From assembly GCF_947568905.1 (NCBI RefSeq), contig NC_079167.1, forward strand, positions 26,474,001 through 26,538,000: 64,000 nucleotides of DNA. Direction: 5' to 3'. The notes under the pieces were generated by a model. The model ran no database searches, was not told where the DNA came from, and worked only from the letters and a program-made list of their open reading frames with translations. The position numbers and the translations under genes are program-made. The stretch's first letter is position 1. The number at the start of each line of letters is the position of its first letter. Positions 428 through 42,600 of the stretch are shown piece by piece. The stretch is from Ostrea edulis (Eukaryota).

Positions 428-567
428 TTACTGACAAGTTCTTTGTGAACAGGATGCCTGAAAATGAAATTGATCTATAGAATATGGAAATTTGTTCGTA
501 CATGTATTAAATCACGGGTTCAATGCAGTACCTGTATAGTGTATACATGTAGTTGTTTTTTATATAT

Positions 568-9384: not shown

Positions 9385-11278
9385 TTATTTCTTCCCAGTT
9401 AGGTCCGGACAAGCTCTCATAGTACAGGCCGCCTGAAACAGAAGAAATCCGGAACTATTAAGACATCAGTTGTCGTTTTTCAGTCGGCCTAACGGAGCCA
9501 CGACACGTGTACCAGGCATCCTCTCATTGTTCCCAGGTCTACAGCAATCATCACTAATTTCTTTATGTTCACAATGCTCTGTTTTTATTCATAGCCCTAG
9601 TTTTAGACCTAGTTTGTGCCAAGTGGCAATTTGGATGATTCAGGAAGCGAATTAGTCATGGTATCTGTACCAAGCTTCGAAGCAATATTGTCTACAAACA
9701 TATGAAGCCTAGCGTAATGAACGGTTGTCGTCCTTTTCAATGATTCATATTCTATATGTACCTTTAACACAGTATCCCCTTTGTTTGAGAAATAAATTGT
9801 TGAAATACAAATGGTCTTACCTCTCCTGATTGGCTATTGTTACACGTGCACACATTGCCACACTGGTCAACCTGCCGAGACTGTCCGAAGGGAATGAATG
9901 TGTTCTGTGACCGACAACCTATTGAAAGACAGTCATCATGAGTCAAAATTCATCTCGTGAAACACAAGTAAATTTGGAAGACAAAAGCCTTACAATCTAG
10001 CTTATAACCTTACCTGCAACACATTGGCATCTTAGCATAGGGATCCATTTAGGGCACATGTACTGTACTTGGGAGGAACCCATTGGAGAAAAGGCACACT
10101 GCTGACCAGCCGGGCAATCCCTGAAAAGTAATGTCAGCGTGATTAAATCCGATCTTGTTGACAGAACATTTATCTGTAATAAGATAGTACATGTATTAAA
10201 CCTACGTCTGATGGCACTGGGCCTGGTTTGTCTGACCGCCAGGGACTAGAGAGGGCTGGAACTGACCAGGAAATCCCCCAGGTTGTCCAGGAAATCCCTG
10301 TTGACCAGGCATTCCAGGTTGCCCACCAGTAAATCCCGGCTGTCCAGCATTGAAACCCGGTTGTCCGAAACCCGGAGGACCACCATTAAACCCGCCTTGA
10401 CCTGCATTGAAGCCTGGTTGAGGAAATCCAGGCTGTCCATTAAATCCTGGCATGTTGGGTTGTCCATTAAAGTTTAAAGGACCATTGAATCCAGCTTGTC
10501 CGTTGAACCTTGGCTGTCCGTTAAATCCATTAAATGGTTGACCAGGCTGCCCATTAAACCCAGGTTGTCCATTAAGTCCTGGTTGTCCATTAAGTCCTGG
10601 CTGCCCATTAAACCCAAGTTGTCCATTGAGTCCAGGTTGCCCATTAAACCCAGGTTGTCCATTGAGTCCAGGTTGCCCATTAAACCCAGGTTGTCCATTG
10701 AGTCCAGGTTGCCCATTAAACCCAGGTTGTCCATTAAGTCCAGGTTGTCCATTAAACCCAAGTGGTCTATTGAAGCCTGGTTGTCCCATTAGATTGGTTT
10801 GTCCAGGAAAGCGTCCCTGTGGCCCAGCACCAAACTGAGGCGAAAATCCTTGGTTAAGGGGGCCAGGAATGCCCTGATTGGGTGGAAAGCCATTAACTCC
10901 GCCCTGCCTCCCAATGGAAAGTCCTGTCTGCCCTTGACCCAGGGATGTGGTTTGGGATGGAATACCAGTATTTTGCACGGATGCTGTGCTGCCTATTGTC
11001 GAAAATCCTGGTTGCATTGATCCAGTTCTAGTTCCAACAGACGATCCAGACTGAATAGATCCGGTCGGTAATCCAGCTGTATTGGTTGTAGAAGTTGACA
11101 GTCCCGTATTTACTGGCTGTAATCCCGAATTCAGTCCGGAATCCGTGTTCTGAGTTTGACTGCTACCGAAATTTTGGGTAGGAAACGAAAATAAGTCCAA
11201 ACCAGTGCCAGTGTTGCCCTGGCCCAGTGCCACACCAACTAAACACAGCAAAATCCATCCAATACTAATCTTCATCAT
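9385..11278 (-). CDS. Cluster gene B: secreted Gly/Gln/Pro/Asn/Phe repeat protein (~441 aa) with C-terminal 12-Cys module
   Basis: Exons 11278-10206, 10120-10014, 9918-9821, 9432-9385; phases 2,1,0. Signal peptide MMKISIGWILLCLVGVALG. 12 tandem NGQPG[LF]-type hexapeptides. Module CHQTDCPAGQQCAFSPMGSSQVQYMCPKWIPMLRCQCVAGCRSQNTFIPFGQSRQVDQCGNVCTCNNSQSGEAACTMRACPDLTGKK*. AATAAA overlaps the stop. Confidence 0.92.
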
Positions 11279-13313
11279 TTTATCAATAAAGATATAATTC
11301 ATTAAAATGAATTTATACGTGCGAGAGAAAATATTCTTAACCAATCAAACATCAATATCGTGGTCAGTCGTCACGGTGTTATCCACACAGTGTGATCAAT
11401 TGGCAGACGACATCGTTATGTCTCAGTTACATCAAAGATCGTTCAGAAGTTCCATAATCGACTAAACATTAATGTTCCTGGCAAGGAAGTCCCAAATTTC
11501 ATCTAGCAATATTGTACAATATTACGACTTTATTTCATTCATATATTGAAAAAAAAAATTATAGACAGATTAGTAAAATAGTGTTTTCAGGGAAATATTT
11601 CTGTAGGTAATGGAAAATATAACGAAATAGGAAAACGAATTCAACTGCACAATACTTACATCATACAATTTTCAATATTATTTGTAAATTTATTTACATT
11701 TATACCAGGCTTGATGATAAACTTTTCTTTGTAATTTTATGATTATTTCTCCAACATGTGATATTCAAATTACATGTTACAGGGAAATTACAGCAAAAAA
11801 TATAAAGATATTATTTCAAAAGTTTTATTCAAAATTTCCTAATCATATTGGTAAATGTAAGCACAAAACAAACTACTGAGATTTTTTCATGTCTGAAAAG
11901 TGAATATTTGTGGCCACTTCCTTGAGTACTAGTAGTGGGTTTAGTAGATCTTGGGGACAATTCTTTATGCACCTTTTCCCGTTCTTTTGGCGATCTTTAC
12001 TGGACATAATAATGATTAATGTGTTGACCGTATCGTTATACGATCTCTCACCTGAACACTCCTTCGGGCCAAATTGCCTCTAGACTAATCAAGTATATAT
12101 AAAAACAAATAGGGTCATACGTATAGAAAAAAAGCAATCATTTTTCAATGATATACACTATATATGTTGATCTATGCCCAATAACATATCTGTTATCAGA
12201 GTTTGTTTCTTTATATAGAACAGAACAATATTATTGTTACACAAACATAGTTATCAAAGGAAGCCTTAATGAGAGGATTTGTCCGTTAAACAAACTCTTT
12301 ACGGGGAGTTCAGAATTATTTGCCATTTGCCAATGGGTTTTTTTTTTGGGTGATAAATTCAAATTGTTTTCATTTTTCGATGAAGTAACTATGACGCGCA
12401 AGTTACCTATTAACTTTCCATAAGATAAAACCGCTCTCTCAACATGTATATTAAACCTAGTTATTTCACCAGAACAGTTTTGTTCATATTAAAGGGGATA
12501 ACAGAAGCAGGTGATCCAAATGTAATTTACCAATTACCCAAGTGTTGTTCCATGTTTCCATTATTTTTACCACTCCCCCTTAATGTAAACAGAATAAAAA
12601 AGTTTACCCGTTTCTCTGTTGATTGTATGCATATAGATATCAAAGACACATGCACTTGTCATGCTTTTGCCAGTAAATATGATACATACAAAGAAACTTC
12701 TAAAAATACTTGTATATATTTCAGAATTGGATCATCAAACATTTGATCTGGAATAAAAATTCATGACATTGCGTCTGTCAGCAGAAAATATATCAAAAGT
12801 GCAAATGATAGTATGTCAACCACATAAAGAAAAGTGCCACTAGTGGCAGTACTAGAAATTGTTCCACCGTGTTAGTGTGCGGTTACCGCGGGTTGAGGTA
12901 GATTAGCATTCGTTTATGACCCTGTACATTGCGTGGGTGACATGCAAGAACTGTTTTATTTCAAGTTCGCGTGTTACCAATGAATACATAATAATTGCTA
13001 AACCAATTGTCATTACTTCAACCATAACTAGTTCTTTATGGAATGTGCGGTGGCGGTGGCGGCGGCGGCGGATTGGAGACTTAGATAATAAATGTTCATA
13101 CAATGTAGTAGGAGAATAAAAGTTTAAGCTATGATAGAGAGAAGAATTCAACAACTTTGGCTAATACAAACCAAATCTGGTGATTCTGAAATTTTTGGTA
13201 ACATTCAACAATCAGAGAAAATATATTACATCGTAAGGATCATCATCGCATGTTCTGGTATATAGCGAAAAACATCCTACAAATATATTCTACTTTATTT
13301 TCTAGCATGAACA

Positions 13314-14069: not shown

Positions 14070-17000
14070 ATGTGTGCTTTAAGGATTCTTTTTATGACTG
14101 TGATGTTATTCTGTTTTTGTGACGGGACTTATTTCTTTAAACCTAAGAAAATATTTTTGCCTCCGATTCATCATATGCCTCACATGCATCATCATCCGCA
14201 CCCTCATCACCACCACCACCATCATCACCATCATCATGGAATGAAGGACCACGGACACATTCACAAATTTCACAAGACAAAGATTCTGAGACCGATCATT
14301 CACCACAAAATTCGCCCTCTTCCAAAACCAGTGATGTACAAGACTTTTCTGATTAGAAAATACAGTTTGCCGCCAAATTTTCATGTGCACATTCCGTTGA
14401 ATAAGAAAATCTATGCACACACCCATGGACCACCTGGACCGCATACCCATTATCCAGAAAAACCCATGTTTATGATGCAAAAACGAAAGATGAAGAAGCT
14501 TTATAGACCAAAACAAGTGTTTCCTCCTCGTGGATATCAACAACCTCCAGCAAAGAATATTTTGAGACATAGAAATATACGAAAATATCCACAAATACCG
14601 GATCCATCCATGCAAATGCAGACAAATATGTTTCTACCTACAGGAATTCTACCACCGCCAAAATCTAGGCCCCCCAAAACCCCTGGAATTAACAAGTATG
14701 ACCTGTGGCTTACGAAAATTAATGAGTGGATGATAAAAAATCAGAATACTGCTAAAGGACTCCCAGTGAAGAGAAAAAGAAAACGGATTATCAACAAGAT
14801 ACACATGAATGTCCCAACTCCTGTTCAAAAATTGAACATTAAGAAACCCGAACCGAAAAAAAAGAACGACGGAATCATCGCTAACTTTGTGGTAGTCAAG
14901 CCACCGTTTATCAGCAAGAGTGAGGAGACTGCCGTTCCAGGAATCCCCGTATTTGAAAATCCCAAACCCTCTATAAAAGACAATATTCTGGATATTCCAA
15001 AATTAGATATGAAACTGCGTCCCACAGCGCCAGTGATGGGTATTCCTATCAGTCTGGATGATATAGGACCCCCGTTTGATATTAACGTTGCCAATAACCA
15101 GAACCGGGGTGACCTTCCACCACCCATTGAAATTGTTGACGACCCAGGTCCTAGTAGAACCGGTGATGGTGATAGAATTGGCATTGGGATTCCTGTAAAT
15201 TTGAGTCCGGGACCATTTGAGTCGGATTCCGTTACACCTCCCAACATCATAGTGGACAGGTTACCTACAGAACAGAACGTCAACAGTATTGTTCCGCTTC
15301 CCGGGAAAATCAACGATATGCTGACAAATGTAGGTGACTTGTCTCACTTTCCAAATTTAGATTTGAGTAATGAACCATTAATAATTGAACCCTTTATGCA
15401 AATACCACCGCTCAGTCAGAGTCCGATGCCGTTTGACATACAGCCATTCCCTTGGGATGTATCGCAAATACCTTTCCCACCGGAAATAATTCCACGTACT
15501 TCAAATAAGGAAAAGGAACCGTACGTTATGAAACCATTGGAACCGATTGTAAAGATGATTGGCCGGGACAGCGTGAAACGTAAAAACGACACAGTATTTG
15601 TTCCTAAACCAATATTAGACCCAGAATATAATGATACTGAGATTGCAAAAGAAGCACCGTATAACATATTTACAGAGGGCCCAGCTGATGTATCCACAAA
15701 TGAACATCAAACATCAATGCCGCCAATTCCACTGCAGACTATTAAACATGACCCCAGTGCATCATCAATTTCTACAACAGCGCAACCATCAACTAAATAC
15801 CAAACGACGTTTACTCTACCACCATTGTCTTTAATGGAGTTCAAACATTCAACTTCTTCTCCGGATGTAACAACACAGACAACAACTATGCGAAACAAAG
15901 AAACGACACCAGCAATTATGACAACAACTCCATTACCAACAATCATACCGGTACCAGATCCCAGTATCCTTGTAAATGGATCAACGGGAGAAGGTCAACA
16001 TAATGTGGACATGGTTGACCAAATAATAGATAAAGAACAACAGAATGACACAGCGTTCTTTAAATATCGACCGGAAGAATCGTTCCCCTACTTATCATTT
16101 CATGGTCTAAAGACATCAACAGCAGCTTCAAAAATCTCGGATACTCGCAAAGAGACAACAACGGCTTGGGCGGTAACTACCGCTTCTCAGCCGACAACAA
16201 AACTATTCAAAGAAACACCAGGTGTGCAAATATTTACGACAACACTTCCCGCACCTGTGACAAACGATCAGGTAAATGAGGAAATAATTTTAGATTTTAT
16301 GACTGATAAACAAATTAGATCATCAAGATCCGATGTTGTGCTTGATTATTCAACCTCTGATAAAGACCAAACAACAACGCCGAAAACACAAGAACGTACA
16401 TCGTTAAAGAGGAGCGACTCTACTTCCACGCAGCCGACAACTGCGGAAGCAACAACATCGACCACTACATTACCCACCACAACACAACTCCTGACAATCC
16501 CAAGTTCAACCACAAAAACCACATTAAAAAATCATACCACTCCGAAATTAGATGATGTTAGTATGGACTCATCAACAACACAGTCAGTATCGACAACAAA
16601 GTCTACCACACTTGACCAAACAACAGAACGTATCTCATCCACAACAAGTGACTACTATTCAGAAACACCAACATACGACTATGTTACAGACCTTTATGAC
16701 TGGCCTTTCAACTGGACAGAAAATTCAACCTTTGTATATTTCGATGACGTCCTGAACATAACACAACAAACAACAGAAATACGTGTTGAAAATACAACAA
16801 CGCCAACAGTCAACATGACTTCAACACCAACACCATCAACTTCAATATTGGTTTCTTCCGAGTTTTCCTCAAGTCACAACCCCACCACAACTATGATGGA
16901 TTTTAGAGGCACAAAACAGACGACAACACTCCCGTCACCTCAGACAGCGGATCTTGATCAGACAACAACCAATACCTCTACCGAACCTACATCTACAATT

Positions 17001-18466
17001 GAAAAGCACTGGCAAACATCACTCTCGCAAACTAACACAACGACCCCGATAGCTACTGGACGCTCAACAACAATGTCAAACAACCAAAACATTTCAGTCA
17101 CTACATCAACTCCGAGATCATCAACAACCGAAGGAACAAAGATATGCCAACAAATGTAAATGTTTCACTAATTATGCTAAAACAATTTATATTTAATTAA
17201 TTATAGGTTTTGTTTTGTTCCATAATAACATTATATATACAGTGTAATAAAATATGCATTTTACTTTTTGCAGATACTGCCAAATCGGTCATGAATGTAC
17301 AGAGAATAATACATGGCTTTGCCCAGATGACGCGCCCGGGACTGACTGCCAGTGCACGCAGGGGTGCCGAGAAGGGCAAATGTTCATACCACTTGGAGAA
17401 TCATTCTATGTAGACGAGTGTGGCAGTGTCTGTTCTTGCTTTAACCTTTACGGAAAGGTATTTTTGCCGCAAAATATTTTTATCAATGCATCGATATAAA
17501 TGTCTCTCCATGATTATTCACAGAAATCACGATTCCAAGTTTTATATTATTACAATGTTTTTTTGTTAGGCTGAGTGCCAAAAGATGCAATGTCCAAACA
17601 GCACCGTAGCAGATCCGGAAAAGAACCGACGAAACTATACTGGGATTTCCATCGGCGGCGTGATCTACATTCCTGTACAACGTGTCAAAATTCCAAAGAA
17701 AACCAAATCGAAAATTCCCGGTGACGATGGCTATACGTATGGTATTTCGATTGGTGGTGTCATCTATATACCGAAAAGAAACCACACGAACGCTCAACTT
17801 GATAAAAACACCAATTGGACGTCCGGAATATCGCTGGGTGGCGTCATTTATGTTCCTTCTCGAGAACACACAAATGAACAAAATGTCAATTCTGACTATG
17901 AGAATGTGGTTGACGGGAATTCTAGTTGGACAAAAGGAATAACTATTGGAGGTATAATCTATGTACCAGTGCATAAAAGAAAGAAAACTTTTCAAGAAAA
18001 GAATAAAGAGTTTGAAAAGATATATGACAAGACAGAATTTGCTGATGCGGATGTCATATCTGTTGAAACGCCTTACGGTTCAACACGGGGCATCACTATC
18101 GGAGGTGTTATTTACATACCAAACAAAAAGAGAAATGAGCCTGTCCATTTCCTTGGTGGAAACGAATTGCAATCAAACAATAAAAATCAGACTTCGCCAA
18201 TACAAGTGGAATACCCACTCGGATGGACAGATGGCATTTCAATCGGTGGGATCATTTATGTGCCCGTCCAACAACGCCGGAAGGTCCAAAACGAACCAGT
18301 TTATTTGATACCCAACATCAAAACAGAACCCGACAACAAAAATAACATTCCGTATTTGACTAAAACCGCTGGGATACATATTGGAGGCATCATCAACGTT
18401 CCCATTGCTAAACGATCATCAATTAAATCTATCAAAATAAAAAAGATGAACCCAGCTTTTGGATAA
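14070..18466 (+). CDS. Cluster gene C: secreted His/Lys/Pro/Thr block protein (~1388 aa) with internal 12-Cys module and C-terminal GISIGGVIYIP repeats
   Basis: Exons 14070-17155 (phase 2), 17274-17457 (phase 0), 17570-18466. Signal peptide MCALRILFMTVMLFCFCDG. Module CQQIYCQIGHECTENNTWLCPDDAPGTDCQCTQGCREGQMFIPLGESFYVDECGSVCSCFNLYGKAECQKMQC. TATAAAA at 13877, AATAAA at 18616. Confidence 0.9.
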
Positions 18467-23151: not shown

Positions 23152-24625
23152 ATGCATTTCTTTGCTTTATTTATCGTCCTTCTACAAATTGCAAATACAG
23201 CCACAGTCCATATAGGTCACCCTGTTAGACTTAGAAATTATGTAACGATGAGAAGGCCACGATTTCCAATGAGATTTTTCCCACTAATCGGCAGATTTTT
23301 CAGAAACAGAAGAGTGAGACCAACCAGCAGACCGCCGACACACTTCCATGTTCCATTAAATGGAAGACAGTTCGAACACTTTCATGCCTTTGGAGACGTA
23401 GATCATACCCACGACACAACATTTCCATCTGTAGTCAACTCGGAAAACGGAGCCGGGTGGGATATTCCGGTTCAATGGAGAGATACTAATACCTGGTCTT
23501 TGTTCGACAAGGTCAACCCGGATTCTGTTCTCGTATGGAACAATGATCTTCCCGACAACAAACCTGATGCCATTCCAGACTCTTCGTTACCAAATCGGCC
23601 ATTATTTCCTGATAGTGTTCTTCCATCCGATGTTGAGGTTCCGGTCATTACTTCAGAATTTCTACCTACGTCAAACAAGCGGAAGGAACCTGCGGTTACA
23701 AGACCACTACCTCCAGTCTCAACGGAAAACGATGGGGTTTTATTACCAGGAATCATTGTAAATGTAACTGATAGCAACTCTACTGACTTAAACAGAACTC
23801 AGAAAAATACGGGAAATGACACAAACACGTCTGGAATAAACAGCAATTTTGTTCCAGTTTCCATGACGACACCTGAAACTCCAAAGGCGGTGAATAAAAA
23901 GACAAAAGAACCATCTTGTCACAAAACGTAAGTTTAGCTTTAAAGATATGTTATCGTTGCTTTAAATAGAAATTTCTGTATTTATATATCTCAGTTTTAA
24001 GTAAGTACAGTGTAGTATTTATATATCTCAGTTTTAAGTGAGTACAGTGTAGTTGACATTTAAGCATGGCTTTCTATTTTTAAGGGGGTGTTTGACTGGT
24101 CACGAGTGTGTCTACTCCGGATCTTACATCTGTCCTATTTATATACCGGAAGTGGACTGTAAATGTAGAGCAGGTTGCAGAGTGGACTATACGTTTATAC
24201 CTTTTGGGACAACTGTTACCATGGATACCTGTGGAAATTCATGCTCTTGTTTCAATATGTTCGGAGCAGTAAGTATAACTTTGTTTCCTTCAAAGAAAAT
24301 ATTTCAAAACTGTAACAACTATTTTTGATTGAGACTACTAGTCACTATAATCAATCTTAATGAATACGTGTATCATTAACAATATTCATTTATTTTCTAG
24401 CCGACATGTTCAAACAAACCTTGCGTAGATGACCCTCAAAAACAAGTACCAGGCAAAATTCTCATACCGGAAGTAGTCAGCGCCTCCACACGGCAAAGTC
24501 CGTTACCAACACAGGTCTCTTTCGACATCACCACGACAGATCAGCTGGAAATTAATCAACCAAAAGACAACATACAAATGAACTTCCCGGTGATTCCAAT
24601 CGTCAAAGATAACCAGAAGAGTTAA
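23152..24625 (+). CDS. Cluster gene D: secreted Arg/His/Pro/Asp-rich protein (~394 aa) with 12-Cys module and short C-terminal tail
   Basis: Exons 23152-23927 (phase 2), 24085-24268 (phase 0), 24401-24625. Signal peptide MHFFALFIVLLQIANT. Module CHKTGCLTGHECVYSGSYICPIYIPEVDCKCRAGCRVDYTFIPFGTTVTMDTCGNSCSCFNMFGAPTCSNKPC. TATAAAAA at 23055, AATAAA at 24735. Confidence 0.9.
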
Positions 24626-30139: not shown

Positions 30140-31223
30140 ATGAAGATCCAAATAACTGTATTTGTATTGTGTTTATTATCTATAACAAATGCTTATTCTT
30201 ACAAAAGGAGAAAAAACTGTGTGAAACGACGTTTGCCATATCCTCCAACGTACCACTATTATAGACCGCAGTTTCCTCCACTTCGTCCAATGCCACAGCC
30301 ACAGTGGCCGATATGGAACGTACCTGCTCCAACCCCTGTGGATATGAGGTTTTATGAGGTTGTAGGGCAACCGATAAGAGGCGACATAGGACAGACACTT
30401 CCTGTGTTTCCGCAACCACAGCCTCCCATAGACACTAAACCAATCGTCCCGGATAATTCCGGACCTGTCATTGTAAATCCAGTAAAACCAGTAATTGAAG
30501 ATTCCGGACCCCTCCGAGGAGACATAGCACCTACCCGTGACACCATGCCACCTGCTGGGATCGGTAAACCTTGCAATGCTTTGTGAGTATACATGTAGAT
30601 CAGTCAATTTGGTTATGTCCCATACTCGTATACAAAGTATCTAATATCTTTCCATCGTTTTTTAAAGATTACAGGAATATTAATTTTACTTATTAGTGAC
30701 TATTTTTTTCTTTGACAGGAGTAATAACTGTGCTATGGGGGAAGTCTGCATGTACGTTGACCAGTCTGTGGGAAATAGCTTCGTATGTCCATCTGCTGCT
30801 GCAGTTTCATGTACTTGTCAACCAGGTAAATATATATATTTTAAGAATTAGTCACTACACTGTCCACATCCTCTGCTAACACTTGCCAAATTCCCCATAG
30901 ATCTATTCTGAGCACTCTGTATTCCTAAGACCTCACACCTCTTTAAAACCTTAATCAAAACGCACACTAATACACAAGTCCATAATGTACTTTCTGTGGT
31001 GTTACACAGGGTGTCGGCATGGGGACCTTTTTATTTCACTTGGTAACACGGTGACGGTGGACCAGTGTGGCAGCAAGTGTTCTTGCATGTCTTTATACGG
31101 AGCAGTAAGTGTCCACCTATCAATTATTGTTGCAGTTTCAGTTTAGATGTGTACCACTCCTAACCCTCAAATCAAAATTCTTTGTTTCACTTTCAGGTCA
31201 GTTGTGAGAAAAAAAATTGCTAG
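30140..31223 (+). CDS. Cluster gene F: secreted Lys/Arg/Tyr/Pro-rich protein (~223 aa) with two RGD motifs and C-terminal 12-Cys module
   Basis: Exons 30140-30582, 30719-30825, 31010-31104, 31197-31223; phases 2,1,0. Signal peptide MKIQITVFVLCLLSITNA. Module CNALSNNCAMGEVCMYVDQSVGNSFVCPSAAAVSCTCQPGCRHGDLFISLGNTVTVDQCGSKCSCMSLYGAVSCEKKNC*. TATAAA at 30079, AATAAA at 31313. Confidence 0.92.
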
Positions 31224-33640: not shown

Positions 33641-36600
33641 TCAGATTTGACATATCTTCTCGCAGTCGCGGCACACATCAGCTTGAAACTGGGAGACCTA
33701 TTCAAACAGAGAAATATACTGCCTTAAAACAGAATTAGAAGTACACTCACGGAGAAAGTATATACACTGCAATTACTACGATTATCATGCAAATAATTAA
33801 TAATATTCAGCATGCAACATATATTAAAAAAAAAGTTTTGTCCAAAAATATTTCCAAGGTTGGAAAAGATTGTCAAACATGCATTCCGTTTTCAGTTAAA
33901 GTTTTCTTGAAGAGCAAGGTTCGATAACTCCTATACCTTTAGTCGTGTTCCTGCTTGCTTCTTACGGAGTTTGTTATACCGAGCCCTACATACGTCACAA
34001 TCAACGCTATCCTCCATGTCAAAGCGAATAGTTCTTCTGCCAACAAGAACATTTCTCAAGAAACATTACCAGAAACAAACACGCAGTTAACACTGAACCA
34101 ACCCACATTTCAGAAGAAAATACCATTTTGATCATTGTATTGCTACATCTGATATTTCGGGTCTGGAGATTTGCAACTACGCATGACCAAATATGATTTT
34201 CCACGAAATAACAAGATGGTCCAGCGAACACCCAATTTTATTTAGTAACCACGAAGCTCTGTTTGACAACCCTTTCACCTTGCAGCTGTTACTTTGCAAA
34301 CTTTCACAACAAATTAAAACATTGAAACTTAATTCAAATTAAGGTTCCATCACCGATTACATTAATATGCATATCATTTTAGTATCGTATGCCCCGGCCG
34401 CATGATTAACTTTCAAACCTCTTCTTACTTTTCCCCAAATTTTTTCCATTATTCCACAACAGATTCAATGCGTTCCTTGCATCTTCCAAGAAAAGGAAAA
34501 CATTTTGTAAAGAAGCTATTTCACCATTTGCAAAATTACATTGATAAGCAATGCAGCAGCCGATTCATAGCTTTCCCTAGAATCTACAAACCTATGGGAC
34601 CTGGTTACATAGTGATAACTATATGGTCACTGTACGTCCAAAGCCATGTTGCTTGGTGTATTTTGCTATAAGAATATCTGCATATCTTCTCTCATCTTCA
34701 GATAACAATGGCGGAGTTCTACTGTTGGAAGAGAATATTGGTCATCCCGAATACAGGAATCAAGCACAGTGGAATTTCTTGGTTATATGTGTAGAGAATT
34801 AATTCAGCCTTCGAAACCATAATCCATCAACATATGGGATTAGATGTAGTTTTATAATTAGGTCTTTTTTATTCCTCGAAATTTGTTATACAAAATCGAT
34901 GAATCATTTAGACCATGGTTTCAAAAGCTCGATAGAGATGGATATGCAGTTCAAGGTTCGCGCGTATCACACAGAATCGCATTTGCTGTCGGTCAGAATT
35001 GACAAAGTACCAGAAATTGGACACTGGTATCCTGAATCCCTTCCCCAATACTTAAAAGAATTTGTTAAAACTTTCAACAAAGAATATTTCAACATGTGCA
35101 TGGAAATTTTTGTGAAGGAAACAAAAGTTATCAACTTTAAATACTGGTTAAACATAACAAAATAAATTGAGTGATTAGTCAACACATGCAAAATTCTGTG
35201 TAAATGCGATCAAACATTGAACAGCACAGCAGCGCAAGCACATGCAAATTAGTAGAAACTGGACATGTAAATGTCTTATATATGGGTTAACTGTTTATAT
35301 AAAAATGTGAAAACGACCCTTTCTTGACTGTCGTAAACGATAGAATACGGATTTTCAAACCAGGACGAAACATAACTGGTTTACGTATTTTGTCAAGAAA
35401 GCGTCGTTTAGGATGACTAATAATGGGGTGGCTAATGGGGAGTGAAGATATATATTCCAAATGTATAAACTACATAACGGTGATCTAAAATAACCAATGT
35501 TCACCTTTTAATAATAAGTATCATCTGAAATTAGCAAAGGATGAATGGAAAGGATAAATTTCACTTAACCCTACATTCATAGGATGGAAATGAAGATGAT
35601 GACATTCAATAGTACGTAAAACAATACCAACAATTAAATCAAAACACCTTACTAATTCATTATCATACTAAGTTTACCCTAACCATGCATAACGACAGTT
35701 ACTAAAATATTTCAAGAAACCAAATTACCTACTTCTATAACAGTTAGACTGAATCACCTTATCGTTAAATTTCCAACACCAACCTATAAGACCAATCTTT
35801 CTGCCAACCCCCAACGTATTAAGGAAACAGGAGAGGTCTACTTACAATGGCTGGTGTTGATATCGGATAGGAGTTACGGGTCTCCCTGGAGACGCATCGT
35901 CGTCAAAAATATCCCTGGAGGTGCGGAGAGACCCGCCTCGTTTGAGCCCTGAAGAATAAATTGGTTTGGTGGGGGATGAACACGTCTTGCTGCCGTCGAA
36001 AGGTTTGTATGTATGAGAGCCTATTTCTTTAGTGGGAGTCCTAGAAGGACTTCGAGTTGGAGATGCCGACTGAGAATAGAATGAACGTCGATGAGCGCTG
36101 TTGATACTTTCTTTAATACTAAGGTTGGTTTCGCTTTTGGCGTTTTTGAGAATGCTTCTGATGTTGGGATTATTTCGTTGTGGAGAGAAGCCGTAAGAGG
36201 ACCTTGTGGGTCCGTAGCTGGAAGACCGGTATGATGGAGCATAATCCTCTGTGTTATAGTAACGATTGCAGCTCTCCTGCTGCACTGCATATTCAAGAGC
36301 CTTGATGAACGTTTTGTCGCCGTTTCGACTCTGAAATTCCTTAGGATTTGATCTTTGATATTCTTCTTTGTAACGATTGTCAATCGGAGATTCCACAATA
36401 CACTCGATTGTCTCCTTTGTGTTGTCGTATCGGGAGTTTCTCGGAGACACGACATACGATCGCTGATGTCTAACTGCCTCATTAGAGTTCATTAAATACG
36501 GACTATACATTAATTGTCTTTTTGCCGGCTTCTCGTCAGTTAAATCTGTGTATTCCAGATCTCTTCCCTTAGGACTTTTGCATCGATTGGGACTTTTTGA

Positions 36601-39600
36601 TCTTAAAGTTGGGCTCTTTCGCATTTCTTTTTTTGGAGTTCGCTGAATATAATTATCCTGTTCATCATCATCTTCATCAAATCTACCTGCGGGTCTTTTG
36701 ATGAGGTATCTTTGAACTTCTAGATCATCGACTGAATCATCGTCTGCGTCTCCAAGAGATGAATTAAAGTTTGATTTATAAGATTGTGTTCTCCTGTGAG
36801 GGTAGATTTCATGCCGAGCTGAATTAGGTGGAGACATTTCGTCGTATCCACTTTCTCTTCCAACGGAAACGGGAGTGGATCTACCTGATGTGAAGGAACT
36901 AGGTTTGTGTAGAGTAGATGTGTAGGAATCATCATACAATCTCCGAGAACTACCTGCTGATTCAGAGCGGGACCTGTATGTTGGAGTTGATGTCATTTTA
37001 ATATCCGTTGGGATTTCTCGTCTTTGAGGTGTCCAGAAAGAATCTTTTGTAAATCCATTTGGCTGACTCTTGATAGAATACCCGTTGATAGAATCTCCAA
37101 AATCTTCTTCATCATCTTCTTCCTCCTCCTCATCATACAGACCATTTTCAATATATTTTCCAATGATTCCACTAACTTTTGATAACTGACCATGTTTCTG
37201 AAATTTTGATAGTTCCAAAAACAGCTGTTTTCTTTCTCTTCTGGCATCATCAAGTATATTTTTCAGATCAGTAATGATACTCTGTTGCTTTCCAGTGAGT
37301 TTCTTCTCCCTAGCCAAATCCTACAAAATGAAACAAGAATTCTAAAATTAAACCGTTACATACAACGCTGATGGAATAAAGGTTAGAATGGTGAAATAAC
37401 TGTCATATGAAAATAAATACTACCTTACCTCTTTTAATTCAGAGTTTTCTCTCTGTGTATTTGCTATAATGTTTTTAAAATTATCCCTTTCTTCAATCAC
37501 CGATTGAAGTGTAGGAATATCTTTCTTGGAGCTGCCAGCTAACAGGTTTCTCATTTGCTCTAGTTCTGCTTCCAAGTCATCAATGCTTGATTTGGATGCT
37601 TGTAGTTGCTTCTCATTCTCCCTAAGTCTCTCCTCTGTACTTTCGTTTCTTGTTTTCTCTTTTTCTAACTGTGTCCTCAGTTCCATGTTTTCTGCCTGGG
37701 ATCTTGAAAGATGTGCTCTACAGTCATTTAGTACATCATTAGTTTTTTCCATTTTTTCTGTCATTTCGACGTTTGAATTCTTGAGCTTAGCTTGTAAAAT
37801 GTCATTTTCTGTAATGGCAGTGGCAAGAGCTTGTTTCAGTTCTATGACATCTTGGTCGGACATGCGTGATTTGTTGGTTAGCTTCTTCCATTTTTCTATT
37901 TTCCTAGGATCATACCCAAGATTATCTGAGGAATCCATTCCCCATATTTCTTCTGATACTTTCCGAACTGGACTAGAATATCCTAAATTTATAGGCTGTC
38001 CTCTTCTAGTTGGAGCAAAGGTTAGGTTACCATCGGGTGCTTCATTGATAGATAAATCCTGCAGACTTCTTGATGTGTGAGAATCAGGTGTAAGCCTTTC
38101 TGGTGAAGTACTAGAGTGAAGTCTTGTTTCTGACTTTGATCTAGTTGGACTCAAGCCCTCTTCCTTCTTCTGCCTGAACATCCTCCCTCTTGTAAAATCT
38201 GGTGATCTGGAGGACCTACGAGGTGACCTTATAGGAGAAACCCGGGGTGATCTTGCTTCTGGGCTTTTTGCAATTTTGTCCTGAACTTGTTCAGAGAGTT
38301 GTTTTGTTAGTTTGTCAATATCTTCTAATTCTGTGTCGTCTGATAAATTTGACTTTTCTAAAACATCCATTTTCAGTTTTAAAAGTTCCAATTCTCGATT
38401 AAGCACTCTCACTAATCTTCTGTTTGGATCGGTGTCCCTGCTCTGCCTGCCTGGTGATGTCATGATTTCCACTTGAGTCCCTTCAGCAGGGGATTTGGCT
38501 CTTGGAGATTTATCTCCTTTCCCTGTGGTTCCCTCCAGAGTAGATCTAGGCAACCTTTCTAAACTTGATCTCGGTGACCTCTCTGAACTTGATCTCTGTG
38601 ACCTATCTAAGCTTGATCTTGGTGATCTTTCTAAACTAGACCTTGGGGACCTTTCCTGACTGAAATCTACTGATCTACTTAGCCTCTCTCTATGATATGC
38701 TCTATCAGGACTTGTTCTTTCTAAGCTTGGAGATTTAGATCGGCTTGATGACCTATCTTTTAGAATAGATTTTGGGAATGTCTCCTCCTCAAACCCAGAC
38801 CCTGGGGTTAATGATCGTGACCTGTATCCTGATGGCCTTTCAGGTGATCTTCTCTCCCTTTTTCTGTCCCTCCCTGTGACAAAATCCTTCTGCATCTTCT
38901 CTTTCAGAGGTTCCACTATATCAACTCGAGGAAATTTTCGTTGATCTCCTTCACTTTCACTACTAGTTGCCTTGCTATCTCTCATTGGTTTTGATAATTC
39001 TAAAAAATGAGGACTTCTTTCAAACCCATCACCCACAACCTCTAGTATCCCCCGTTTAGTTGTTGGTAAGCTTGAAACATTACTACTACTTTCTGGTTTG
39101 GAAATGGGAGTTGCATTAGGTGCAAAGGTTACTTTACTTTCTGTGTCTGGTATTCTTTGTTTAGTTTTTTGACTATCTGGTTCCATGGTTGGTGCAACAT
39201 CATCCACAGCATTTAAATCTAACAAGTTATGAAGACCTCTAGAAGAATGCTCTTGTGGTCTATTTGTTTCCTGATCATGGAAATTGGCCTCATGTCTGGC
39301 TTGGCGAAGAGCCTGAAGTAAAAACTGCATTTCAGGACTTGTGGCTCCCTGTCCAGGCATGATAAAAATGGGCATCCCTCTTCCTATCCCTGGATAGTAA
39401 TATGGAGGAGCTGTACCAAATGTCCCCTGATAGCCAGCTTCAGCACCAATATCTTCAATTTCTTCTTGAGATTTTGAATCACCTTCCTTCATACTAGATT
39501 TGTCTAAGTCACTGGAGGTAATAGACAAATTATCTACTTCTTGTTGTTCAAGAGATTTCCGAGCTTCTTCCATTTTCTGCCATTCTTGTTTTCTAATTTC

Positions 39601-42600
39601 AAACTTTTGTTTGGCCTCGGCCATAATAGACTCCGTAGTCCTGGCACGTTTCACAGTTCGAGACACTATATGAAGTGGCTCTTTAACATTGGTATCTCTC
39701 TTTGGTGTTGTTTCTCGAAATTCTTCTTTCAAAAAAGTTTCATCAACATTTATTTGCAAGACTTCATCCTTTTCGTCATTGTCTTTCGAATAAGTGTTTT
39801 CTTCATCTGCCTCCTCAAATGTTTTCTGTGGTGCACTTTCACTTGTTTCAACTTTCACTGTTGGTAGCTGGTCTTTCTTATCAGTAGTTAAAGACACAGA
39901 TCCTGACAAAACACTTATACTTTCTTCATCATCACCATCGTCTCCTTCAACAGGTAAATGCTCAGACACTTGTTCAGAAATAGTTTTGATGATCAGGCTC
40001 TCACCCTCGGGTGTAACATCAGGATCACCGGACTTTGCAGAACCATTGGAGGAGGAGAACCAATCAGAATTATCATCTGCTAGGTCGCCCACTGATGAAT
40101 GTTTGACCAAAGGTGATGTTGTTTTTCTTCTTTCAGGTGAACCTGCTACAGCACCTTTGGGGATGTCCTTGGTTGACTGCTAGAAGACAGAAAAACAAAA
40201 CAATGATACTAGATGTTTCATACAGCTAGACAGAAAATAAGTTCATATGTTCAGTTTCAGTGAAGATTTACCTTTTCCCTCTCTGAACTGTCTTGTCTAT
40301 AATCAACTCGATCAGTTGCAACCTGCAAACAAAATTTGGATAACAATGATATTAAACTGCAAAAATGCAGGTACACTATTCTATAATTTGCATTGATACT
40401 GGTATATTGAAGTATTTGGAAGTAATGAATGCTAAAAGAGGTTAGGAAAAATATACAAAACGTTACATTCCTGAAATATCTGGTATTAGATACAGACATA
40501 AATGAGAATCAAAATCCCAAACACATGCTATTTATTTGTTTAAACAAACACTAAAAGGCTATATATATAAGACTGAAAATCAACAAAACATTAATAAGCA
40601 TTAACACAATGACATTCTTCACCGTGTTATATTTGCTTAAACCAAAATATTGTTGAAATTGCGTAACATGGTTGAAAGCTCATGCGTGTGTTATACTGAT
40701 AATGCATGAAATTTGATTACACATTTTCAGACACAGATTTACTCACACACCAGGTGACAAGTCACTGTATTACAGGTAAAATAAAAAAGGTGTCATAAAA
40801 ACTTTGTCACCTTGATTTCTTTATGTCATGTAATCAAAAATAGAAAATTTCGTTACTGAATGACTTCAGTTTTGATCAGGCTTTTTTTTAAATGGTCTTA
40901 ATTTTCTTTTCATGGAGTAATGAATTGTACCTTTCTTTTCAGTAGGGAGATATAGATCATCAACGTGTGCTCATCTATATTGCTTTTAATCACATCTGCT
41001 GGGCTGGAAAAACGAGAAAAAGAAAGCACATTAATCACAATCACATACAAGAGGCCAGGTAGCAAATAAATAGTCTCTGCAGAAACAAGTCAAGACACAA
41101 ATTATACTCTACAGCAATGAGGTCGCCAAAATCCATTCATATTTTTAAATACATCAGTAAATTTTCCAATTTCTTTTCCATAGTACAAACATTTTGCATA
41201 ATATGGTGAAGCACTTTTTATGCCGTTGTTAAGTTAAACACATAATGGTCTATAAATTGTATAGAAGGTATCCCACGGGTAAATGTACATGATTGGATCT
41301 GTACATTGATGGCTTCCCTCATACAAAATAAGTAAAGGCATTATTCAAGCAACACAAAAAGATAGATTTAAGAATAAATAAGACCAAATGATAAAAAGTG
41401 CTCAGCCATCTTGCATAGAGATATTGGCTATTCAGCAAGATTGTTTAAACTGAACAGGCATACAAGAGTGTGTGTTGTCCGATGATCAATAACCGCTCAA
41501 CTATAAAAACAGGTTGATGATATAATCTCTGTTTTTTAATAAATAGTACATTGGAAACCCGATGATTTGCCAATTATGCCCGATGAAATAAAAATTTCTA
41601 GACACCAGGTTAACAGTGTCATATGAAGATCATGCATTCTTTCTATGCCGTTCTGTACTTCAACAATACTGGATTTTTCAGTTACATGTATAGGCCCAAC
41701 ATTTTGGACATTAGCACATTTGAGATAATACTTTAAATCTCATGTTAGTACCTCAGTCTTGTTCTATTGCTTTGATTTAAACAATTCGGTTTACACTGCG
41801 ATTAATTTGGTATAAGAATTCTCTCTTGTCAACACAAGTGGTCTTTAAAAGCCAATTTTACTATCACCACTTGCTGAGGGTCTGAAGTTGAACTCATTAG
41901 ATCATATAGAGGGAAAGAGGCAGTATTTGATGAAGTGCACTCCTGTAACCTTAAGTATCACACTGTCTAAAATGTGTTAAAATCTAATCTACTGTGTAAT
42001 CATTAGTTAAAATAGCATCTTAGATTATGCCACAATGACAACATCATACAGTTCTGGTTGTTATGCATTCGATATCTGCAAATGTTCTACCTGTATAATT
42101 ACCAGCATACGAAAACCTGTCGATAATCATAACCTGCGCAAATATGAACCTGCAGTCTAAAAAGCAAATGAAGTTTCTTTCACTTACACATAGACAACAG
42201 CAATGTGGTAAGGAATTCAGCACTTACTTTACGATGTCCTGACGAATGCCTAGCTGTTTCTCTAACACCTCCAACAAGGCTGCTAATTCTTTCTCCTTGT
42301 TCCTAGCCTGATATGGTAAATAAAGATGTTGATCAATTACATTAACTGTGTGTCAATCAATACTGGCCATTATCTGTCTATCAATAGACATGCTTAGGTC
42401 AGGTGTCTGGAAATCCTAGGGATATTGTGTTGGAGAAATTCGGAATTGAGATTTTAAGTCAAACTATAAATTACTTTCTTTGGAATATATATCGATTGCA
42501 TTACAGGATTCCTAAATTGAAAGGTCATGGGTTTGGGGATTTTAAAGGAATTTTAGAATACACAGGTATTTTGCTTGTGTATTTTGTACAAGAAATATAG

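What the first reader, a model, noticed from the sequence alone, without database searches (positions are those of the whole stretch)
17642..18403. Seven copies of a GI[ST][IL]GG[VI]IY[IV]P motif in the tail of gene C
Seen: after the Cys module, the ~290-aa tail has seven motifs: GISIGGVIYIP (x2), GISLGGVIYVP, GITIGGIIYVP, GITIGGVIYIP, GISIGGIIYVP, GIHIGGIINVP. Most are preceded by [YWSK]Tx and followed within a few residues by basic clusters (KR, KRK, KKR, RRK). Spacers are unalignable and of variable length, and synonymous sites vary, which points to protein-level selection. Inference: a beta-hairpin (GG turn) self-assembly or cross-beta sticker, loosely recalling the amyloid-beta GGVVIA zipper; alternatively processed peptides or Tyr sites for tyrosinase cross-linking. 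I recognise no known domain.
Basis: partly seen in the sequence, partly recalled or inferred. Interest (0 to 1): 0.75.

Follow-up and report, generated by a model that had tools for sequence, protein, structure and literature searches.

The report
Oyster-only seven-motif tail on a mucin-like protein
The seven near-identical 11-residue motifs are real, are kept almost letter for letter across four oyster genera, and match no known protein family; they probably let a secreted mucin-like protein lock into a material by beta-sheet contacts, but this is untested.

Summary
Seven copies of G-I-[S/T/H]-[I/L]-G-G-[V/I]-I-[Y/N]-[V/I]-P lie at exactly the stated coordinates in one frame, and nowhere else in the window.

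Gene C has three exons and encodes 1388 aa:
- a signal peptide;
- a His-rich stretch;
- a Pro/basic region;
- a Thr/Ser mucin-like region;
- a 12-Cys module whose second half matches Pfam TILa;
- a 290-aa tail.

Spliced transcript contigs from a related oyster join the three exons as predicted. Annotated orthologues in Saccostrea and Crassostrea virginica ("mucin-2-like", "proteoglycan 4-like", "uncharacterized") have the same layout.

- No known family matches (Pfam, NCBIfam, PDB, a profile search of 1.84 billion proteins).
- The motifs are conserved. Each copy keeps its own variant, 73 of 77 motif columns are invariant, and motif dN/dS is about 0.005 at saturated dS.
- The exon is transcribed with gene C.

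The linkers are also constrained (dN/dS about 0.06). Conserved basic sites are missing after motifs 3 and 5, which weakens the released-peptide idea.

AlphaFold finds no confident fold (pLDDT 27-30).

My best reading, at about 0.35, is a defined beta-sheet assembly element. Tissue and function remain unknown. I found no paper on it.

The parts
14070..17155 (+). Gene C exon 1. Encodes the signal peptide, the His-rich stretch, the Pro/basic region, the Thr/Ser-rich mucin-like region and the first Cys of the 12-Cys module. GT donor at 17156.
   Evidence: ORF; junction read; the three-exon CDS is 4167 nt with a single terminal stop; orthologue layout; composition.
17274..17457 (+). Gene C exon 2. 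Encodes Cys 2-10 of the module. Its second half is TILa/VWC-like.
   Evidence: AG acceptor and GT donor; the spliced orthologue contig L001 joins it on both sides; TILa scores 30 bits (cut-off 27) on the spliced C. virginica module.
17570..18466 (+). Gene C last exon. Encodes Cys 11-12 (17570-17593), then the 290-aa tail (17594-18463) and the stop codon.
   Evidence: Tail pI is 9.5-9.6. It is the most conserved part of the protein: 81-82% identity to Saccostrea and dN 0.121 against a Crassostrea-type genomic contig, versus 0.24-0.42 in exon 1.
17642..17674 (+). Motif 1, GISIGGVIYIP.
   Evidence: identical in all six lineages compared.
17741..17773 (+). Motif 2, GISIGGVIYIP, followed by an invariant KRNHTN.
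17825..17857 (+). Motif 3, GISLGGVIYVP. The Leu is specific to this copy and there is no basic cluster after it.
   Evidence: The SNP 17842 C>T seen in one DNA run is synonymous.
17936..17968 (+). Motif 4, GITIGGIIYVP, followed by an invariant VHKRKKTFQEKN.
17969..18088 (+). The longest linker (40 aa), between motifs 4 and 5. It is almost invariant across oysters, and part of it is drawn as a helix.
   Evidence: Invariant columns; helix at residues 141-154 of the tail model, at low confidence.
18089..18121 (+). Motif 5, GITIGGVIYIP. The basic cluster after it occurs only in the Ostrea lineage.
18233..18265 (+). Motif 6, GISIGGIIYVP.
18371..18403 (+). Motif 7, GIHIGGIINVP. This deviant last copy has His and Asn (Lys in C. 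virginica) where the others have Ser/Thr and Tyr, and the deviation is conserved.
18404..18463 (+). Basic C-terminal end, ...IKKMNPAFG, conserved in all oysters examined.

Best explanation
The tail is an oyster-specific C-terminal assembly element of a large secreted mucin-like protein. Seven short hydrophobic strand-GlyGly-strand units sit in polar, basic, partly glycosylatable linkers. Each unit ends in Pro, and most are followed by Lys/Arg. I infer that the units pair or stack with one another, within one chain or between chains, into a defined beta-sheet core. That core would tie the protein into an extracellular material or gel. The Pro and basic flanks, and a more polar seventh copy, would limit uncontrolled growth of the sheet. 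What is shown: the motifs, their extreme conservation, the gene structure, secretion signals and the absence of known relatives. What is inferred: the hairpin geometry, the stacking and the material role.
For: There are seven motifs, far beyond chance. Conservation is extreme and copy-specific. 73 of 77 motif columns are invariant over five lineages. Only 4 substitutions occur across the five other lineages. Motif dN/dS is 0.004-0.011 with dS above 1.3. Even the Ile/Val choices are fixed per copy, which points to tight packing. The seventh copy is conservedly more polar, as the end unit of a stack would be. The tail is as constrained as the disulfide module and more constrained than the rest of the protein. 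The context is a signal peptide, a PTS region and a TILa/VWC-like Cys module of the kind found at mucin C-termini. Both AlphaFold models draw every motif as strand-turn-strand, but at pLDDT 20-30, so this is only compatible, not supporting.
Against: There is no confident fold in either AlphaFold run: mean pLDDT 27 and 30, pTM 0.15-0.21. Both alignments held only 8-9 oyster sequences. No experimental or expression data exist for tissue, material or aggregation state. The linkers are also strongly conserved (dN/dS about 0.06), which a simple sticker-and-spacer picture does not predict. The very strict motif conservation would fit a specific partner-binding site equally well.
Confidence: 0.35

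Rival explanations
1. The motifs are seven copies of a docking site for one specific partner, so the tail acts as a multivalent ligand rather than self-associating. The partner could be an enzyme such as a tyrosinase or peroxidase, a lectin, another matrix protein, or a Cys module of the neighbouring paralogues.
For: Near-absolute conservation of an 11-14-residue motif, including the Ile/Val choices, is typical of a recognition interface. The region is not predicted to fold on its own. Six paralogous module-bearing genes lie side by side in the window.
Against: No partner is known. Docking motifs are rarely this hydrophobic. The copy-specific variants are fixed, which is not expected if all copies bind the same site. 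The linkers are conserved too.
Confidence: 0.2
2. The tail folds on its own as a monomeric repeat domain, such as a hairpin-stack solenoid or a seven-unit toroid, with a binding or structural role. AlphaFold misses it because the alignment is shallow.
For: The whole tail is strongly constrained, linkers included (dN/dS about 0.06). Copy-specific variants are fixed. Extra short hydrophobic segments lie in linkers 5-7. The last copy deviates like a cap.
Against: pLDDT is below 50 at every residue of the tail-only model and across the whole tail of the second model. Linkers 1-3 are only 17-26 aa and almost entirely polar, too little for a blade or a rung beyond the hairpin itself. Pfam and PDB give no match.
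Confidence: 0.15
3. The tail is a precursor cut at basic sites by proprotein convertases, releasing peptides that end in the conserved motif.
For: Basic clusters follow five or six of the motifs. KRNHTN after motif 2 and VHKRKK after motif 4 are invariant. The protein ends in KK-MNPAFG, which looks like a dibasic site followed by a C-terminal Gly.
Against: There is no basic site on the N-terminal side of any motif. Motif 3 has none after it. The site after motif 5 exists only in Ostrea, and the KNRR before motif 1 is not conserved. The linkers are conserved, unlike typical precursor spacers. The tail is attached to a 1100-aa mucin-like protein.
Confidence: 0.08
4. The motifs mainly present Tyr residues for enzymatic cross-linking (DOPA, quinone or di-Tyr) into a hardened material.
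For: Tyr is invariant in six of the seven motifs and makes up 5% of the tail. From general knowledge, not tested here, oysters have many tyrosinases.
Against: A Tyr substrate site would not need seven invariant hydrophobic and Gly positions around it. The seventh copy conservedly lacks Tyr. This could coexist with the best explanation rather than replace it.
Confidence: 0.08

Closest known systems
Functional-amyloid repeat proteins (curli CsgA; Pseudomonas FapC, which has conserved repeats separated by variable linkers)
   Same: They have several imperfect copies of a short strand-turn-strand unit with invariant Gly and hydrophobic positions. In FapC the linkers vary in length. They are secreted proteins that build extracellular material.
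   Different: There is no sequence relationship: no Pfam hit and no hit in the profile search. This protein is animal, not bacterial, and its units are 11-14 aa rather than about 20-35 aa. Cross-beta structure is not shown, and AlphaFold gives no solenoid here.
C-terminal segment of human amyloid-beta 42, residues 33-42, GLMVGGVVIA (sequence from general knowledge)
   Same: The pattern Gly-hydrophobic-x-hydrophobic-Gly-Gly-Val-hydrophobic-hydrophobic-hydrophobic is shared, with a Gly-x-x-x-Gly-Gly spacing.
   Different: This is a resemblance over about ten residues only, with no homology. The oyster motif ends in Pro and sits in a basic polar context. It recurs seven times and is under purifying selection as part of a normal secreted protein.
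C-terminal regions of gel-forming mucins and related proteins (PTS region followed by VWC/TIL-type Cys modules)
   Same: It has a signal peptide and a long Thr/Ser/Pro region. The Cys-rich C-terminal module has a second half that reaches the Pfam TILa threshold in the C. virginica orthologue. NCBI names the orthologues mucin-2-like and proteoglycan 4-like.
   Different: Pfam finds no VWD, C8 or cystine-knot domain. The His-rich and Pro/basic regions and the seven-motif tail have no counterpart in those families.
Aggregation-prone segments with gatekeeper residues (the general principle that Pro, Lys, Arg, Glu and Asp flank beta-aggregating stretches)
   Same: Every motif is closed by Pro. Six of the seven are followed within a few residues by Lys/Arg.
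   Different: Gatekeepers are described as protection against unwanted aggregation in globular proteins. Here the arrangement recurs seven times and is itself the conserved feature.
P0053, a small secreted protein from a high-GC bacterium found in a metagenome
   Same: It has three copies of x-I-G-G-I-x-Y-V-P after a signal peptide, with variable linkers. It was the only non-oyster protein with the same motif in 1.84 billion representatives.
   Different: The match is borderline (E = 7e-4). The protein is bacterial (its neighbour is ArgJ) and has no family name. No relatives turned up in reference genomes. This is most likely convergence or chance.

Membership tests
Any curated protein family or solved structure | A significant profile or sequence match covering the tail | tested here: not met
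   Pfam's best hit has E = 0.0097, far below its cut-off. NCBIfam's best is 19.6 bits against a cut-off of 65. The best PDB profile hit has E = 0.68. The ESM Atlas feature search gave no usable hit.
Curli/Fap-type functional amyloid | Sequence homology to the CsgA or FapC repeat families | tested here: not met
   No Pfam hit. The profile search of 1.84 billion proteins returned only oyster sequences plus two marginal bacterial hits of another kind.
Curli/Fap-type functional amyloid | Repeated strand-turn-strand units with conserved Gly and hydrophobic ladders | tested here: inconclusive
   The sequence pattern fits, and all seven motifs are drawn as strand-turn-strand. However, pLDDT is 20-30.
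Curli/Fap-type functional amyloid | Cross-beta fibres shown by dye binding, diffraction or microscopy | not testable with these tools
   This needs recombinant protein or peptides.
Multi-copy peptide precursor (prohormone type) | Each copy is bounded by conserved basic cleavage sites | tested here: not met
   There are no basic sites N-terminal of the motifs, none after motif 3, and the site after motif 5 is absent outside Ostrea.
Multi-copy peptide precursor (prohormone type) | Spacers evolve much faster than the peptides | tested here: not met
   Spacer dN/dS is 0.05-0.07 and 107 of 197 spacer columns are invariant. One 40-aa linker is almost invariant.
Gel-forming mucin / VWF-type C-terminus | Long Pro/Thr/Ser region in a secreted protein | tested here: met
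   Residues 521-1024 are 24% Thr, 12% Ser and 8% Pro, and a signal peptide is present.
Gel-forming mucin / VWF-type C-terminus | VWD, C8 or cystine-knot domains | tested here: not met
   The only Pfam hit on the full-length C. virginica orthologue is TILa.
Gel-forming mucin / VWF-type C-terminus | TIL/VWC-type Cys module | tested here: met
   TILa scores 30.0 bits (cut-off 27) with E = 5.5e-7 on the spliced C. virginica module. It falls below the cut-off in Saccostrea (20.8 bits) and on the window's middle exon alone (15.2 bits).
Seven-bladed beta-propeller (for example Kelch, which also has a GlyGly doublet) | Seven units of about 40-50 aa, each with four strands, and a profile match | tested here: not met
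   Units are 28-51 aa with polar linkers. There is no Pfam hit and no predicted fold.

The most novel reading that the evidence does not exclude
Oysters encode a dedicated seven-fold cross-beta zipper whose unit resembles the C-terminal segment of amyloid-beta. It is capped by a polar last copy and restrained by Pro and basic flanks. It turns a His-rich mucin-like protein into a functional amyloid-type component of an oyster-specific material, such as cement, periostracum, shell matrix or a gel.
Probability: 0.2. Interest if true: 0.75.

Novelty: new variant of a known kind. Interest (0 to 1): 0.45.

Why it matters
If the tail is a controlled beta-sheet assembly element, it would be a compact, genetically encoded design for building or anchoring an extracellular material: an 11-residue unit, a Pro and basic stop, and a polar cap. 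That is useful for understanding oyster cement, shell or mucus biology and as a template for peptide materials. It would also be a natural case of a strongly aggregation-prone motif kept harmless and functional for a very long time. Even without a known function, it marks the most constrained part of a protein that public annotation labels only "mucin-2-like", "proteoglycan 4-like" or "uncharacterized". It also gives a simple sequence signature for finding the gene in other oysters.

Tried and rejected
- **Family and structure searches.** Pfam, NCBIfam, a PDB profile search and the ESM Atlas feature search on the tail gave nothing meaningful.
- **Structure prediction.** Two AlphaFold runs, on the tail alone and on the C. 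virginica Cys module plus tail, gave pLDDT 27 and 30. No fold search was run on them because matches to such models are meaningless.
- **RNA evidence in this species.** The four runs that hold the stretch are all DNA-type contigs that include the introns. Transcription in this species is therefore not shown directly; the evidence comes from spliced contigs of a related oyster.
- **Literature.** Searches returned either no papers or nothing about this protein. Terms tried were the motif strings, the orthologue accessions and gene number, the run accessions, "mucin-2-like" or "proteoglycan 4-like" with oyster or Crassostrea, and His-rich/mucin-like/VWC with oyster.
- **Bacterial look-alike P0053.** It has no family name and no relatives in reference genomes. 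I treat it as convergence.
- **P0052.** This is a bacterial Ig/cadherin repeat protein whose last strand pair matches weakly. I rejected it as chance.
- **P0048-P0051.** These look like translations of bisulfite-converted oyster reads (Ser to Phe, Pro to Leu, Thr to Ile). They are not independent relatives.
- **Kelch or propeller reading.** Rejected on unit length, polar linkers and the lack of any profile hit.
- **A splice-junction slip of my own.** An off-by-one error was corrected.

Full report
**1. The observation**

A six-frame regex scan of the whole window finds exactly seven matches to G-[IVL]-x-[IVL]-G-G-[IVL]-[IVL]-x-[IVL]-P. All are on the + strand in one frame:
- 17642-17674
- 17741-17773
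- 17825-17857
- 17936-17968
- 18089-18121
- 18233-18265
- 18371-18403

They lie in a 293-aa ORF at 17585-18466.

- Chance: only 3 of 200,000 shuffles of the tail's residues contain even one loose match.
- DNA level: the copies share only a 34-nt core at 68-74% identity, and Tandem Repeats Finder reports nothing.
- Codon level: among the 21 copy pairs, 129 codon positions differ synonymously and 50 non-synonymously.
- Spacers: 22, 17, 26, 40, 37 and 35 aa, not alignable with one another.
- Flanks: Thr sits at position -2 in six copies (at -1 in copy 1), often after Trp or Tyr. The eight residues after the motif carry net charge +2 to +4 in six copies, and -1 in copy 3.

**2. The gene**

The sequence gives clean splice sites:
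- Exon 1 runs from 14070 to 17155, with a GT donor at 17156.
- Exon 2 runs from 17274 to 17457, after an AG acceptor and before a GT donor.
- The last exon runs from 17570 to the stop at 18464-18466.

The joined CDS is 4167 nt with one terminal stop and encodes 1388 aa. The parts, in order, are:
- a signal peptide;
- a stretch that is 30% His;
- a Pro/basic region (pI 9.8);
- a Thr/Ser/Pro region (24% Thr, pI 4.8);
- a 12-Cys module spread over all three exons;
- a 290-aa tail of pI 9.6.

The model is not only a prediction. Two Logan contigs from a related oyster (L001 and L002, from two runs) are intron-less. They read straight from the Thr-rich region through ...ICQQT-YCKIG...NLYGK-AECQK... 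into the seven-motif tail. NCBI gene models have the same layout and all seven motifs:
- Saccostrea echinata, XP_061169054, 1410 aa, "mucin-2-like".
- Saccostrea cucullata, XP_062603481, 1385 aa, "mucin-2-like".
- Crassostrea virginica, LOC111118160, XP_022313192, 1329 aa, "proteoglycan 4-like" or "uncharacterized".

In this species itself I have no RNA evidence. The four public runs that hold the stretch are DNA-type contigs that include the introns. Earlier notes of this scan call the genome a flat oyster, and the orthologue pattern fits an ostreid.

The second half of the Cys module reaches the Pfam TILa threshold in the spliced C. virginica sequence (30.0 bits, cut-off 27, E = 5.5e-7). No VWD, C8 or cystine-knot domain is found.

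The window holds six such modules. The paralogues at about 431-511, 9388-9465 and 31164-31220 stop right after the 12th Cys. The one at 24401-24622 has a 66-aa tail without the motif. The seven-motif tail is therefore an extension peculiar to gene C.

**3. Conservation**

Tail orthologues are 75-91% identical to the window. Each copy keeps its own variant in every lineage:
- Copy 3 always has Leu.
- Copies 4 and 5 have Thr.
- The Val/Ile choices at positions 6 and 9 are fixed copy by copy.
- Copy 7 always has His, and has Asn (Lys in C. virginica) where the others have Tyr.

Only four substitutions occur in the 35 motif copies of the other five lineages. Over five lineages, 73 of 77 motif columns and 107 of 197 linker columns are invariant.

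| Comparison, and part | Measure | Value |
|---|---|---|
| Window vs three other oyster sequences (L001, L003, L006): motifs | dN/dS | 0.004-0.011 (dS above 1.3, i.e. saturated) |
| Same comparison: linkers | dN/dS | 0.05-0.07 |
| Window vs genomic contig L006: whole tail | dN | 0.121 |
| Same comparison: Cys exon | dN | 0.123 |
| Same comparison: Pro/basic region | dN | 0.236 |
| Same comparison: His region | dN | 0.255 |
| Same comparison: Thr/Ser region | dN | 0.424 |

Identity to Saccostrea is 81-82% for the tail, 72-76% for the Cys module and 55% for the mucin-like region. The two SNPs seen in the tail among the DNA runs, 17842 C>T and 18086 C>A, are both synonymous (read).

The tail is thus the best-kept part of the protein.

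**4. Relatives and known families**

- Pfam, NCBIfam and a PDB profile search give nothing above noise. The ESM Atlas feature search gives no usable hit.
- A profile of nine oyster tails searched against 1.84 billion representative proteins returns seven hits:
  - one is the oyster orthologue cluster;
  - four are short fragments that look like translations of bisulfite-converted oyster reads;
  - one is a bacterial Ig/cadherin repeat protein whose last strand pair matches weakly (Pfam Big_9);
  - one is P0053, a 136-aa secreted protein of a high-GC bacterium with three copies of x-I-G-G-I-x-Y-V-P (E = 7e-4).
- P0053 has no family name and no relatives in reference genomes. I read it as convergence.
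- A word search tuned to long proteins finds only the Saccostrea orthologues.
- No paper in the library holds the motif strings, the accessions or the gene number.

One caveat applies. The full-length Saccostrea and C. virginica proteins were not among the hits. A cluster whose representative lacks the tail can therefore hide it, and "oysters only" is the present evidence, not proof.

**5. Structure**

AlphaFold on the tail with a nine-sequence alignment gives mean pLDDT 27.2 and pTM 0.15, with no residue above 50. The C. virginica module plus tail gives mean pLDDT 29.9; only the TILa-like half of the module reaches about 60.

In the second model every motif is drawn as strand-turn-strand around the GlyGly. 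At this confidence that is only compatible with a hairpin, not evidence for one.

Their mean hydropathy is +1.5 against -1.3 for the linkers. The linkers are rich in Lys, Asn, Thr, Glu and Ser and carry net charge +14. Sequons NYT, NHT and NSS next to motifs 1, 2 and 4 are invariant.

If the GlyGly forms a two-residue turn (an inference), the two faces of the hairpin would differ:
- One face would carry Ile1, Ile3, Val/Ile6 and Tyr8.
- The other would carry Ser/Thr2, Ile7, Gly0 and Val/Ile9, a mix of small and hydrophobic residues suited to tight sheet packing.

Copy 7 would then put a polar residue on each face, as an end cap would.

**6. What it most likely does**

I commit, at about 0.35, to a defined beta-sheet assembly element. 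The seven units would pair or stack, within a chain or between chains. That would tie this His-rich, mucin-like, disulfide-module-bearing protein into an extracellular material or gel. Pro and basic flanks, and a polar last copy, would limit sheet growth.

The fixation of even Ile/Val choices per copy and the conserved linkers argue for a specific architecture rather than loose stickiness.

Rivals:
- A multivalent docking site for a specific partner (0.2).
- An autonomous monomeric repeat fold that AlphaFold misses (0.15).
- Released peptides (0.08). This is weakened because there are no N-terminal basic sites, none after copy 3, the site after copy 5 is not conserved, and the linkers are conserved.
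- Tyr cross-linking sites (0.08), which could coexist with the main reading.

The tissue and the material are unknown.

**7. Comparison with what is known, and novelty**

- It works most like the repeat units of functional amyloids, especially FapC with its conserved repeats and variable linkers. It is not a member of those families (no homology).
- It resembles the GLMVGGVVIA end of amyloid-beta only over about ten residues.
- The host protein is mucin-like but lacks the defining VWD and cystine-knot domains.
- The genes are already in public annotation as uncharacterized or mucin-like proteins. I found no description of the motif or the tail.

I rate it a new variant of a known kind: a repeat-motif assembly tail in a secreted structural protein. 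Interest is moderate at 0.45. It is real, unusually constrained and lineage-specific, but no function is shown.

Noticed in passing
L004:270-680 (protein P0053): A 136-aa secreted protein from a high-GC bacterial metagenome contig, next to an ArgJ gene, carries three copies of x-I-G-G-I-x-Y-V-P separated by variable linkers. It was the only non-oyster protein with the same motif in the 1.84-billion-protein search (E = 7e-4). It has no family name and no relatives in reference genomes.
   Followed up: partly
proteins P0048-P0051 (hits): These short library proteins are oyster tail fragments with systematic Ser-to-Phe, Pro-to-Leu and Thr-to-Ile changes. That is what translating bisulfite-converted (C-to-T) reads would give, so they are artefacts rather than diverged relatives.
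   Followed up: no
window 431-511 (-), 9388-9465 (-), 24401-24622 (+), 31164-31220 (+): These are the last exons of four paralogues of the 12-Cys-module cluster. Three end within a few residues of the 12th Cys. The one at 24401-24622 has a 66-aa Pro/Gln-rich tail without the motif.
   Followed up: partly
window 17155: T>C is seen in two DNA runs at the last base of exon 1. After splicing it changes the junction codon from Ile to Thr. Thr is the residue in all other oysters, and a 99%-identical library protein (P0043) also reads ...ICQQT.
   Followed up: partly
window 18443-18463: The protein ends in K-K-M-N-P-A-F-G in every oyster examined (Asp for Asn in some). A dibasic pair followed by a short peptide ending in Gly looks like a cleavage-plus-amidation signal. 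This is unexplained.
   Followed up: no
window 14193-14240: The reads tool skipped the His-run coding stretch as a repeat. Its length differs between oyster species, so it may be length-polymorphic.
   Followed up: no
window 17275-17457 with 17570-17596: The middle exon of the Cys module alone scores only 15 bits on Pfam TILa. The spliced C. virginica module reaches 30 bits (cut-off 27). The match therefore appears only when the exons are joined.
   Followed up: yes
window 35842-40110 (-): Two long ORFs (491 and 896 aa) encode Ser/Arg/Glu-rich, partly coiled-coil-like sequence. They are probably exons of one unrelated intracellular gene.
   Followed up: no
window 10202-11344 (-): The paralogue's low-complexity exon is built of about twenty N-G-Q-P-G-[FL] units, an elastomer-like Gly/Pro/Gln repeat in front of the same Cys module.
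   Followed up: no
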